A DNA stretch of 63,426 bases, the filler included, from Octopus bimaculoides (lineage: Eukaryota): assembly GCF_001194135.2 (NCBI RefSeq). It is 5 parts of 5 records of this genome, joined end to end, with 100 filler letters (N's around TTAATTAATTAA, not from the genome) between each part and the next. Parts side by side here need not be neighbours in the genome. Positions count along the whole stretch, not along the records: positions 1 to 26,390 come from NC_069001.1; 4 more parts are not named here. One strand, given 5' to 3'. The position numbers and the translations under genes are program-made. Below the pieces are notes generated by a model, which did not search any database, was not told the DNA's origin, and saw only the letters and a list, made by a program, of their open reading frames with translations. This document shows positions 37 to 1,874 of this stretch, in pieces (within the stretch, counting starts at the first letter, position 1; each line of letters begins with the position of its first letter).

Positions 37-1874
37 GAGTGTAGGACAAAAGTCCCTTAAGACAAAAGCCCCACCGATAAAAGCCCCTCGGACAAAAGCC
101 CTATAGTTAAAGTATGAAAGCTTCACGGATATATTTTTCGCTTGTTTTTTTTTTCCGTTTTTTTCCCCTTTAATTTGTTTTAGTCATTAGATTGGGTCAT
201 GCTGGGGCACCACCTTGAAGAATTTTTAGTTGAACGTATCGACTCCAGAATTTTTTCCTTTTTACTTGTTACAGTTATTAGACTGCGGCCATGCTGAGGC
301 ATCACCTTGAAGAACTTTTAGTCGAATGTATCGCCGTTAGAATTTTTTAAATTATTTTTACTTAGACTGCGGACATGCTGGGGTACCACCTTGAAGAATA
401 TTTAGTCAAATGTAACGACCCCAGGATTTTAAAAATGATTTTCAACCAGTGCATGTAGTTAAGCCTAGAAGGTATCTCCACATGCTAGAAATAACAACCA
501 AATTTCTTAAATGTTTTTTATAACCACTCGTTTTTTTTTTATTTTCTCAAAATCTGTTTTACTTGTTTCAGTTATTGGACTACGGCCATGCTGGGGCGCC
601 AGCTTGAAGAATTTTTAATCGCAGAAAAATCAGCATTTAAAAAAATATATTTAAAGTCTTTTGCTTTCTTCTCTCAGTACTTACAGGTTAATGAGAATAA
701 GCTGACCTTTTGAACTTTCTCCGGACGTTGAAGGTCTAACAGAAGGCTAGTCATTCAAACGTACTCCTTATAGTTTGCCTAAATAGGGAGATGGGTGTTT
801 CTCCATAAAAATGACAAATTTTGGTTTTTGTGAAAAAAAAAACATGTCAGAGACATGTGTAATATTTACTTTCATTTTATGTGTGTATATATAGTCATTC
901 AAGCGTACTTCTTATTGTTTTTATGTTTCTACACATTTCTTGAAGTAAATGCTTTCCCTTTTGTTAGAATTCAGACAATATGTACATTGAGTAGTAAAGA
1001 GTCTTGTATTCTGTTATTCTATTATTGATGTTAAAGTTGATTTATTTTCATTTTCAAACTTTAAAATTATTTTAAAAATAAGAAAAATAATTGAAACACA
1101 CGGAAAACACCATTGTGAGGGACATAGATGTTTTGACACCGTTTTTCGATAGAAATATTTTTTATTTACTTAAAAATTGGAATTTTGGAAAATAATGTTT
1201 TTTTTACAACTGCGATTTCCGTTTTTGTTTACGTAAAATTATAAAAAAAAATTGCAACATTTGGGAGAGACCTTCTAGGCTTAGCTTTATGTGCTGGTTG
1301 AAAATCACCTAAAAAAGATTCTGGGATCGATATATTCGACTAAAAATTCTTCAAGGCGGTGCCCCAGCATGGCCGCAGTCCAGTGACTGAAACAAGTAAA
1401 AAGATTTTTAGAAAATAAAAAAAAAACGAAGAATAACCAAAAAATATAAGCGGTGGAGGTGTATAAAAAATTTCAAGAGATTTGGCTGTTATTTCTAGTA
1501 TGTGGAGAGACCTTCTAGGCTTAACTTCATGCGCCGGTTGAAAATCATCTAAAAAGTTCTGGGGCCGAACAATCGACTAAAAATCCCCCAAGGTGGTATC
1601 CCAGCATGGCCGTAGTCTAATGATTGCAACAAGTAAAAAGAAAAACAAAAATGAATTTTATCACAGAAGTGGTTTTGATCAAGCTTGAAAAAAATTTGGG
1701 GTTCCATACAGTCATCTAAAAATTCTTCAAGGTGGTGCCCCAGAATGGTTGGCCGCAGTCTAATAACTGCAACAAGTAAAAAAAATTCTGGGGTCGATAC
1801 ATTCAACTAAAAATTCTAAAAACGAAAAAAATAACCGTGGGGATTTTGTCCTAGGGGACTTTTGTCCGGAACGC
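37..1874. mobile_element. Non-autonomous foldback/Mutator(MULE)-like DNA transposon with long modular inverted arms
   Basis: Left terminus GAGTGTAGGACAAAAGTCCCTTAAGACAAAAGCCCCAC matches the reverse complement of the right terminus (GCGTTCCGGACAAAAGTCCCCTAGGACAAAATCCCCAC). A 9-bp TSD flanks it: TAATCGAAT (28-36) / TACTCGAAT (1875-1883), 8/9 identical. Arms ~37-620 and ~1262-1874 are mirrored. No ORF inside. Confidence 0.85.

What the first reader, a model, noticed from the sequence alone, without database searches (positions are those of the whole stretch)
37..1874. Foldback/Mutator-like transposon whose long inverted arms are built from tandem SINE 3' ends
Seen: short terminal GACAAAAG(T/C)CCC subrepeats and a 9-bp TSD (8/9 match) bound the element. 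The ~600-bp arms mirror each other. Each arm consists of ~75-85-bp modules (left ~170, 260, 358, 558; right ~1318, 1555, 1695, partial 1786) plus a non-SINE spacer block (left ~435-510; right ~1262-1310 and 1475-1550). The module is the same sequence as the 3' end of the free SINE copies at 33300, 37430, 48120 and 63150. Known: 9-bp TSDs, G-starting TIRs and modular long TIRs typify MULE/foldback elements. Inference: a DNA transposon captured a retroposon fragment into its TIRs and amplified and homogenised it in both arms. This would spread SINE sequence by cut-and-paste and form a long dsRNA hairpin (an A-to-I editing or siRNA substrate) if transcribed.
Basis: partly seen in the sequence, partly recalled or inferred. 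Interest (0 to 1): 0.72.

Follow-up and report, generated by a model that had tools for sequence, protein, structure and literature searches.

The report
Octopus foldback transposon with SINE-tail arms
This is one old, non-coding copy of a "foldback" DNA transposon in an octopus-type genome whose two ~600-base mirror-image arms are built largely from tandem copies of the last ~90 bases of an octopus SINE; it is a known kind of element with an unusual building block.

Summary
The described structure is real. Positions 37-1874 form a 1,838-bp element. It has inverted ends carrying 15-bp GACAAAAGYCCC subrepeats (4 left, 2 right; 6 hits against 0.13 expected). It is flanked by TAATCGAAT/TACTCGAAT (8/9; P about 0.004-0.03). 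Its two collinear inverted arms (37-621 and 1264-1874) are about 85% alike, and a 642-bp AT-rich middle has no ORF.

Each arm holds ~90-bp modules, eight in all. I fetched 24 kb of Octopus vulgaris DNA. The modules are homologous to the extreme 3' end of a tRNA-derived SINE found there. All eight share a 10-nt insertion that the two O. vulgaris SINE copies lack, and full modules start at a similar 5' point. This points to a single acquisition followed by tandem amplification, not independent SINE insertions.

The end layout (about 9-bp duplication, 7 non-matching bases, GGA, 15-bp tandem repeats) matches Tm1, a Mutator/Foldback family. No transposase is present, so the superfamily remains inferred.

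"Homogenised" is not supported: modules are 62-85% alike with no arm-specific clustering.

The parts
28..36 (.). Left copy of the putative target-site duplication, TAATCGAAT
   Evidence: 8/9 match to 1875-1883 at a symmetric 7-nt offset from the strong TIR. P = 0.0043 with symmetric offsets, 0.027 with any offsets.
37..43 (+). Left outermost 7 nt (GAGTGTA), not matching the other end (3/7)
   Evidence: Direct reading. Same position as the asymmetric 7-bp motifs A1/A2 of Tm1 (PMC3169594).
44..102 (+). Left terminal inverted repeat: GGA followed by four 15-bp GACAAAAGYCCC subrepeats; probable transposase-binding sites (inferred)
   Evidence: I18; period 15; 6 hits against 0.13 expected.
124..140 (+). 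Short block CACGGATATATTTTTCG, mirrored at 1823-1839
   Evidence: Global arm alignment.
160..430 (-). Left-arm tandem array of three SINE-3'-end modules (L1 160-256, L2 253-348, L3 344-430). SINE sense is on the minus strand, so tails point to the left end.
   Evidence: TRF period 84, 3.0 copies; D1/D2; alignments A1 and A2.
427..520 (-). Left-arm spacer block, mirrored at 1465-1555 and partly at 1264-1316
   Evidence: I1 103 nt at 84%, I11 53 nt at 81%. Link to the SINE region upstream of the module is weak (P 0.006-0.29).
528..621 (-). T-rich junction (528-559) plus innermost left module L4 (548-621, lacking the first ~20 nt of the module)
   Evidence: I3 90 nt at 82%, I20 32 nt at 94%; A1.
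622..1263 (.). Middle domain: 642 bp, 27.6% G+C, no ORF above 57 aa, no mirror partner
1264..1404 (+). Right-arm long unit: spacer copy (1264-1316) plus module R1 (1310-1404)
   Evidence: D6, D3, I2, I11; A1.
1405..1503 (+). Right-arm A-rich junction (mirror of 528-559 at 1398-1429), 1430-1464 with no partner in the left arm, and the start of the second spacer
   Evidence: (I20).
1504..1645 (+). Right-arm long unit: spacer (1504-1555) plus module R2 (1551-1645)
   Evidence: D6 (90%), D3, I1, I4.
1646..1688 (+). Right-arm segment with no partner in the left arm
   Evidence: Gap in the global arm alignment.
1686..1822 (+). Right-arm modules R3 (1686-1780) and partial R4 (1777-1822). SINE sense is on the plus strand, so tails point to the right end.
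   Evidence: I8, I13 (95%), I17 (97%); A1.
1823..1867 (-). Right terminal inverted repeat: CACGG block, two 15-bp subrepeats, GGA
   Evidence: (I18).
1868..1874 (-). Right outermost 7 nt (GGAACGC on +), not matching the left end
1875..1883 (.). Right copy of the putative target-site duplication, TACTCGAAT

Best explanation
Positions 37-1874 are one old copy of a non-autonomous, foldback-type cut-and-paste DNA transposon in an octopod genome.

Shown:
- The ends are inverted. From the outside they consist of about 9 bp of duplicated target, 7 non-matching bases, GGA, and then 15-bp GACAAAAGYCCC tandem repeats (4 left, 2 right).
- The two ~600-bp arms are collinear mirror images.
- Most of each arm consists of ~90-bp units homologous to the extreme 3' end of an octopus tRNA-derived SINE, with the SINE tails pointing outward.
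- The 642-bp middle codes for nothing.

Inferred:
- A 5'-truncated SINE copy, or a piece of one, landed in the long terminal repeat of an ancestral element. It acquired a 10-nt insertion and was multiplied in tandem by slippage or unequal exchange. The pattern became present in both arms before this copy inserted.
- The element was moved in trans by a transposase that binds the 15-bp subterminal repeats and makes about 9-bp staggered cuts. A Mutator-like (Phantom/Foldback-group) enzyme is the most likely candidate.
- Since insertion the copy has decayed neutrally. The arms differ by about 15%, and the duplication has 1 mismatch in 9. It is probably no longer mobile.
- If transcribed, it would fold into a long imperfect hairpin.
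For: Terminal motif is confined to both ends in inverted orientation: 6 hits against 0.13 expected. TIR 86% over 36 nt.

Flanking 8/9 direct repeat at a symmetric offset: P = 0.004-0.027. One mismatch in 9 agrees with the arm divergence (expected 9 x 0.15 = 1.4 mismatches), as expected if both date from the insertion.

The arms are collinear including unique non-module blocks: 416-518/1465-1567 at 84%, 528-559/1398-1429 at 94%, 219-291/1750-1817 at 95-97%. Fold z = -27 with 397 inter-arm pairs.

There is no ORF above 57 aa in the middle domain. The longest ORF in the element is an 85-aa frame that runs across repeat modules in the right arm; it has no relative in the protein collection.

SINE origin: a SINE sequence I recalled from memory hit two full copies in O. 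vulgaris locus L004, at 87.5% and 84% over 337 nt. This validates it as a real octopus repeat. The module consensus and element modules hit the 3' ends of exactly those copies, E = 1.6e-9 and 3e-8, and align up to the SINE 3' terminus.

Single origin: all 8 modules share a 10-nt insertion absent from both O. vulgaris copies. Modules are closer to each other (62-85%) than to the copies (57-76%).

Octopod source: a second repeat family is shared between the window (24415-24564, 12087-12220) and L004 at 81-93%.

Architecture precedent: Tm1 of Meloidogyne has a 9-bp TSD, asymmetric 7-bp end motifs, GGA, 13-15-bp tandem repeats in differing numbers at the two ends, non-coding members, and a Phantom-type MULE transposase in the autonomous member (PMC3169594). 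MULE TSDs are 8-11 bp with long TIRs (PMC6446971). Tetris has TIRs with an internal tandem-repeat domain, a non-coding middle and 8-9 bp TSDs (PMC4079207).
Against: Only one copy was seen. Nothing else in the 26 kb window or in 24 kb of O. vulgaris DNA carries the terminal motif, so mobility is inferred from structure alone.

Only 36 bp of left flank exists in the piece, and no empty site was available.

The duplication is imperfect and could be 8 bp (7/8). Its P value is moderate if offsets are left free (0.027).

No transposase is present, so the superfamily is not established. Foldback-like structure is known to be polyphyletic (PMC3169594).

The 10-nt insertion might also exist in a SINE subfamily of the source species. 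I could not check this, and it would weaken the single-capture argument.

The SINE comparison uses another species' copies, plus a consensus recalled from memory.
Confidence: 0.7

Rival explanations
1. It is the same kind of foldback-like non-autonomous transposon, but it is mobilised by a non-Mutator transposase. Candidates are Merlin (8-9 bp duplications) or an hAT- or P-type enzyme (8 or 7-8 bp).
For: The duplication could be read as 8 bp (7/8). Merlin elements have TIRs of 24-462 bp and 8-9 bp duplications (PMC8101967). Foldback-like arms occur with different transposase classes; Galileo, for example, belongs to the P superfamily (PMC3169594; PMC4079207).
Against: Merlin ends carry a conserved terminal 5'-GG, whereas the duplication-defined ends here read GA and GC. 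The layout of 7 nt, GGA, then 15-bp repeats matches the Mutator/Foldback family Tm1 in detail. The best-supported duplication length is 9.
Confidence: 0.2
2. It is not a mobile element. A SINE-tail minisatellite was copied in inverted orientation by a local replication or repair accident, giving a palindromic duplication. The flanking repeat is then chance.
For: Only one copy was seen. The duplication is imperfect, with P = 0.027 when offsets are free. Inverted SINE pairs arise naturally; L004 has two SINE copies tail to tail about 410 bp apart.
Against: The arms end precisely in a non-SINE motif repeated at 15-bp period at both extremities and nowhere else. This is the hallmark of transposase-binding ends. 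The direct repeat sits at the same 7-nt distance from both ends (P = 0.004). The whole layout reproduces a described transposon family.
Confidence: 0.08
3. The modules are independent SINE insertions that happened to accumulate in opposite orientations on the two sides of a spacer.
For: Each module reaches the natural 3' end of the SINE and is followed by an A-rich stretch.
Against: No module has a tRNA-like head. Six of the eight begin at about the same truncated point, and adjacent ones abut head to tail with no flanking duplications of their own. All share a 10-nt insertion. The order of modules and of unique junction blocks is mirrored between the arms.
Confidence: 0.02
4. The direction of transfer was the reverse. 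The ~90-bp unit is native to the DNA transposon, and the SINE acquired its 3' end from it.
For: Homology alone does not give direction.
Against: The unit covers the very 3' terminus of the SINE. It includes a GTCGA-loop-TCGAC hairpin that is also present, with a different loop, in a second octopus SINE family (consensus ...GGGGTCGATCTAATCGACT...). From general knowledge, such 3' stem-loops are typical retroposon parts shared with partner LINEs. In the element's modules this stem is often broken (L1, R2, R3), as expected for passive copies.
Confidence: 0.05

Closest known systems
Tm1, Mutator/Foldback family of root-knot nematodes (PMC3169594)
   Same: About 9-bp target duplication, 7 non-matching bases at each extremity, then GGA, then 13-15-bp tandem repeats present in different numbers at the two ends. 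Includes non-coding members of about 1-2.5 kb. TIRs of single copies are imperfect (mean 93%).
   Different: No sequence similarity in the motifs. Tm1 arms consist almost only of the short repeats, whereas this element adds ~500 bp of SINE-derived ~90-bp modules and a spacer block. Tm1 has a known autonomous member with a Phantom-type MULE transposase, and none is known here.
Tetris, foldback element of Drosophila virilis (PMC4079207)
   Same: Long TIRs with an outer flanking domain, an internal domain of tandem repeats in variable number, and an inner domain. Non-coding middle, 8-9 bp duplications, no autonomous copy found.
   Different: Tetris repeats (~220 bp) seem to derive from its own flanking domain, not from a retroposon. 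Tetris repeats also seeded satellite arrays, which was not examined here.
Drosophila Foldback (FB) and Galileo
   Same: Long, internally repetitive inverted arms and hairpin-forming potential. FB gives 9-bp duplications (my own knowledge). Galileo's internal repeats carry extra transposase-binding sites (cited in PMC4079207).
   Different: [quoted passage not shown] In neither element are the arm repeats derived from a SINE.
Octopus tRNA-derived SINE (copies at L004:19335-19744 + and 20157-20500 -, O. vulgaris)
   Same: The last ~80 nt, from ...AATAAGTCCYGGGGTCGA... to ...GAAACAAGTAAAAG, is homologous to every arm module.
   Different: The modules lack the tRNA-like head, the internal microsatellite and the body. 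They carry a shared 10-nt insertion (AAATTCTTCA) and are arranged in tandem inside a DNA transposon's arms.

Membership tests
Foldback-like elements (structural class) | Long terminal inverted repeats that are internally repetitive, with repeat numbers differing between the arms | tested here: met
   Arms 37-621 and 1264-1874 are collinear. There are 4 versus 2 terminal 15-bp repeats and 4 versus 3.5 modules.
Foldback-like elements (structural class) | Non-coding or variable middle domain between the arms | tested here: met
   622-1263 is 27.6% G+C with no ORF above 57 aa.
Foldback-like elements (structural class) | Dispersed in several copies with different flanking duplications | not testable with these tools
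   No other copy in the window or in L004. No eukaryotic genome search was available.
Mutator-like elements (MULE, incl. Phantom/Foldback group) | Target-site duplication of 8-11 bp, most often 9 | tested here: met
   TAATCGAAT/TACTCGAAT match 8/9, P = 0.004-0.027. Family range from PMC6446971.
Mutator-like elements (MULE, incl. Phantom/Foldback group) | Long TIRs (tens to hundreds of bp) | tested here: met
   PMC6446971 lists TIRs of 18-613 bp for Phantom.
Mutator-like elements (MULE, incl. Phantom/Foldback group) | Mobilised by a MULE-domain DDE transposase (autonomous partner with the same termini) | not testable with these tools
   No transposase in the element and no access to the rest of the genome.
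Merlin | 8-9 bp duplication | tested here: met
   family feature from PMC8101967.
Merlin | Conserved terminal 5'-GG of the TIRs | tested here: not met
   The ends next to the duplication read GAGTG... and GCGTT... (reverse complement). GG appears only 7 nt further in.
hAT | 8-bp duplication and 5'-YARNG termini (feature list from my own knowledge) | tested here: not met
   An 8-bp reading is possible (7/8), but the termini GAGTG / GCGTT begin with G, not Y.
SINE (each module as an independent retroposon copy) | tRNA-like pol III head, own target duplication | tested here: not met
   No tRNA-like sequence. Adjacent modules abut in tandem and six of eight start at about the same truncated point.
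Octopus tRNA-derived SINE (sequence homology of the module only) | Significant similarity to the SINE 3' end, reaching its terminus | tested here: met
   blastn E = 1.6e-9 and 3e-8 to the 3' ends of two O. vulgaris copies; alignment A2; 57-76% identity per copy.

The most novel reading that the evidence does not exclude
The element belongs to a family that can move in two ways. It can move by cut-and-paste through its transposase-binding ends. It can also move by copy-and-paste, because the SINE 3' tails point outward in both arms. Any read-through transcript, on either strand, therefore ends in sense-oriented SINE 3' ends that the SINE's partner LINE reverse transcriptase could prime on. In an animal lineage known for heavy A-to-I editing, such a family would also be a dispersed source of ~600-bp hairpin dsRNA.
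Probability: 0.05. Interest if true: 0.8.

Novelty: new member of a known kind. Interest (0 to 1): 0.35.

Why it matters
Foldback-type transposons with internally repetitive arms are well known. This copy adds an octopod example with a Tm1-like end structure.

The unusual point is that the arm repeats were recruited from a retroposon tail. This is a concrete case of a class I fragment being carried and multiplied inside a class II element.

If the family proves to be multi-copy, three things follow:
- It would mark SINE-annotated sequence in octopus genomes that did not arise by retroposition.
- It would supply long hairpin substrates for ADAR or small-RNA pathways. Repeat-derived dsRNA is the main editing target across animals (PMC9989829).
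- It would give a handle for finding an active or extinct Mutator-like transposase in cephalopods.

As a single decayed copy, it is a modest curiosity.

Tried and rejected
Read depth, junctions, RNA and small-RNA tests were therefore not done.
- The 85-aa ORF across the right arm gave no exact look-up and no homologue.
- Pattern scans for the module core and for the terminal motif found 0 hits in metagenome, prokaryote-genome and viral collections.
- Full-text searches for SINE and module strings found nothing relevant.
- Rfam found nothing in the element at the gathering threshold or at E<=1. There are no tRNA-like genes.
- Pfam found nothing on ten window ORFs.
- I tried a Tc1-like pseudogene as a handle for the organism. 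The best hits were only 57% identical, from a Logan run and a TARA metagenome, and gave no clue.
- The approach that worked was indirect. Its genomic locus L004 contained two SINE copies.
- The idea that the spacer block is also SINE-derived is not established. An AGAGACC...CTAGGCTTA match lies in the right place upstream, but P is 0.006-0.29 depending on the copy. I left it as inconclusive.
- The idea that modules are homogenised within arms is rejected.
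Full report
**What is there**

The first 1.9 kb of the piece hold a compact 1,838-bp structure at positions 37-1874.

- The 12-mer GACAAAAGYCCC (one mismatch allowed) occurs six times in the 26 kb. Four copies are at 45, 61, 76 and 91 on the plus strand, and two are at 1839 and 1855 on the minus strand. 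Chance expectation is 0.13. TRF reports the 15-bp period.
- The outer 36 nt of the two sides are 86% complementary: 44-79 against 1832-1867.
- Seven bases further out on each side lie TAATCGAAT (28-36) and TACTCGAAT (1875-1883). I drew 20,000 random position pairs from the same window. An 8/9 match appears in 0.43% of pairs when the two offsets must be equal, and in 2.7% when any offsets 0-12 are allowed.
- The seven bases between duplication and strong repeat differ between the ends: GAGTGTA against the reverse-complemented GCGTTCC.
- An 8-bp reading of the duplication (7/8) cannot be excluded.

**The arms**

- A global alignment of 37-660 with the reverse complement of 1230-1874 is collinear from the termini inward. 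The differences are whole-block insertions or deletions.
- The collinearity does not rest on the repeated modules alone. Unique blocks are mirrored in the right order: 124-140/1823-1839, 219-291/1750-1817 (95-97%), 416-518/1465-1567 (84%) and 528-559/1398-1429 (94%).
- Over 355 ungapped collinear positions the arms are 84.8% identical, K2P 0.17, with 33 transitions and 21 transversions.
- One mismatch in the 9-bp duplication is what that divergence predicts (about 1.4). Arms and duplication are therefore consistent with one insertion event followed by neutral decay.
- Folded as one strand, the element gives -712 kcal/mol against -409 +/- 11 for dinucleotide shuffles (z = -27), with 397 left:right base pairs.
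- The 642-bp middle (622-1263) is 27.6% G+C and has no ORF longer than 57 aa.
- The longest ORF in the element is 85 aa and runs across repeat modules in the right arm. It has no relatives.

**The modules**

- A spacer block (427-520) recurs at 1465-1555 and partly at 1264-1316. It always lies immediately 5' of a module in module sense.
- Pairwise module identity is 62-85%, with no clustering by arm.

**Are the modules SINE ends?**

- From memory I recognised the module as resembling the 3' end of the abundant octopus tRNA-derived SINE. That was a lead, not evidence.
- To test it I needed octopus DNA. This returned O. vulgaris rhodopsin P0121.
- I then fetched its genomic locus L004: 24.3 kb of chromosome OX597836.1, assembly GCA_951406725.2.
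- The recalled SINE hit two full copies there, at 19408-19744 (+, 84%) and 20157-20489 (-, 87.5%), each over 337 nt. The recalled sequence is therefore a real octopus repeat.
- Copy a shows a tRNA-like head, an internal microsatellite and the 3' domain.
- The module consensus and the element's own modules hit exactly the 3' ends of these two copies, E = 1.6e-9 and 3e-8.
- In the alignment the modules run from ...AATAAGTCCYGGGGTCGA... to the SINE terminus ...GAAACAAGTAAAAG.
- Identity to the individual O. vulgaris copies is 57-76%. Those two copies are only 80% alike themselves.
- Identity to the recalled consensus is 86% over 79 nt.
- All eight modules share a 10-nt insertion (AAATTCTTCA) that both O. 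vulgaris copies lack.
- In the alignment, six of the eight modules start at about the same 5' point. L4 lacks the first ~20 nt and R4 is cut at its 3' side. Adjacent modules abut head to tail. None has a tRNA-like head or its own flanking duplication.
- This pattern fits a single SINE fragment multiplied in place, and it rules out independent SINE insertions.
- Whether the spacer block is also SINE-derived remains open. A short AGAGACC...CTAGGCTTA match lies at the right upstream place, with P from 0.006 to 0.29 depending on the copy.

**Source organism**

The window shares a second repeat family with L004. Window 24415-24564 and 12087-12220 match L004 22492-22642, 7349-7484 and 24182-24262 at 81-93%. 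Together with the SINE match, this places the window in an octopod close to Octopus. The species was not determined.

**How it most likely works**

- The end layout is the one described for Tm1 of root-knot nematodes: about 9 bp of duplication, 7 asymmetric bases, GGA, and 13-15-bp tandem repeats in different numbers at the two ends.
- The Tm1 family has non-coding members and one member that encodes a Phantom-type MULE transposase (PMC3169594).
- MULEs give 8-11 bp duplications and have long TIRs (PMC6446971).
- Tetris of D. virilis shows the same domain plan: a flanking domain, an internal tandem-repeat domain, an inner domain and a non-coding middle, with 8-9 bp duplications (PMC4079207).
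- I therefore read the 15-bp repeats as transposase-binding sites, and the element as a non-autonomous foldback-type transposon moved in trans.
- A Mutator-like enzyme is the most likely mover. This step is inferred, because no transposase is present and foldback-like structure is polyphyletic.
- Merlin also gives 8-9 bp duplications, but its TIRs begin with GG (PMC8101967). The duplication-defined ends here begin GA and GC.

**Direction of transfer**

- The module includes a GTCGA-loop-TCGAC hairpin.
- A second octopus SINE family has the same hairpin with a different loop. It is often broken in the element's modules.
- This fits a functional retroposon 3' domain copied passively into the transposon, rather than the reverse.

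**What could not be done**

- Copy number, other insertion sites, transcription, editing and small RNAs are all untested.
- DNA pattern scans of the public collections gave nothing. Those collections are not animal genomes.
- Only 36 bp of left flank exist in the piece.

**Verdict**

Foldback-type transposon: yes, on structure. SINE-derived arm modules: yes, on sequence. Mutator membership: plausible but untested. Homogenisation: no. Family-wide spread and dsRNA biology: untested.
- This is a new member of a known kind of element with an unusual source for its arm repeats. It is of moderate interest.

Noticed in passing
window 25400-26390 (-): Tc1-like transposase pseudogene broken by frameshifts and stops, and cut by the piece's edge. 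A stitched 322-aa reading hits Tc1/DDE_3 transposases at up to 57% identity.
   Followed up: partly
window ~14700-15240 (+): Second Tc1/mariner-like fragment, recognised by eye from its translation (...VWRQDSALCHTSGKSQ...). No Pfam hit at E<=0.01 for the 105-aa ORF.
   Followed up: partly
window 24415-24564 (+), 12087-12220 (-), 5670-5760; L004 22492-22642, 7349-7484, 24182-24262: A ~150-bp repeat family shared with Octopus vulgaris at 80-93% identity (consensus ...GCCTTTCATCCTTTCGGGGTCGATAAATTAAGTACCAGTTGCGTACTGGGGTCGATCTAATCGACTG...). It is probably another octopus SINE and indicates an octopod source.
   Followed up: partly
window modules (e.g. 1323-1340); L004 19675-19692; A3 consensus: A GTCGA-(5 nt)-TCGAC / GTCGAT-CTA-ATCGAC hairpin is conserved in the 3' domain of two different octopus SINE families. 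It is decayed in several of the element's modules. It may be a LINE reverse-transcriptase recognition stem.
   Followed up: no
L004 19335-19744 (+) and 20157-20500 (-): Two full SINE copies lie tail to tail about 410 bp apart, about 5 kb downstream of the O. vulgaris rhodopsin gene. This is a natural inverted SINE pair that could also form dsRNA if transcribed.
   Followed up: no
window 8878-8957: Perfect 23-bp tandem repeat, 3.5 copies (AAAGGAGAAAGGCTAAGAATAGA), next to (AGAG)n/(AGAGAGAT)n at 8988-9071.
   Followed up: no
window 2635-2992, 10748-10845, 16123-16644, 17804-18353, 19351-19738: Runs of N (assembly gaps), four of the five flanked by microsatellites. The window comes from a gapped draft assembly, and repeats may be hidden in the gaps.
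   Followed up: no
window 748-776 and 892-920; 11747-11786 and 12005-12044: Two short two-copy direct repeats (29 nt at 90%, inside the element's middle domain; 40 nt at 85%, elsewhere). Meaning unknown.
   Followed up: no
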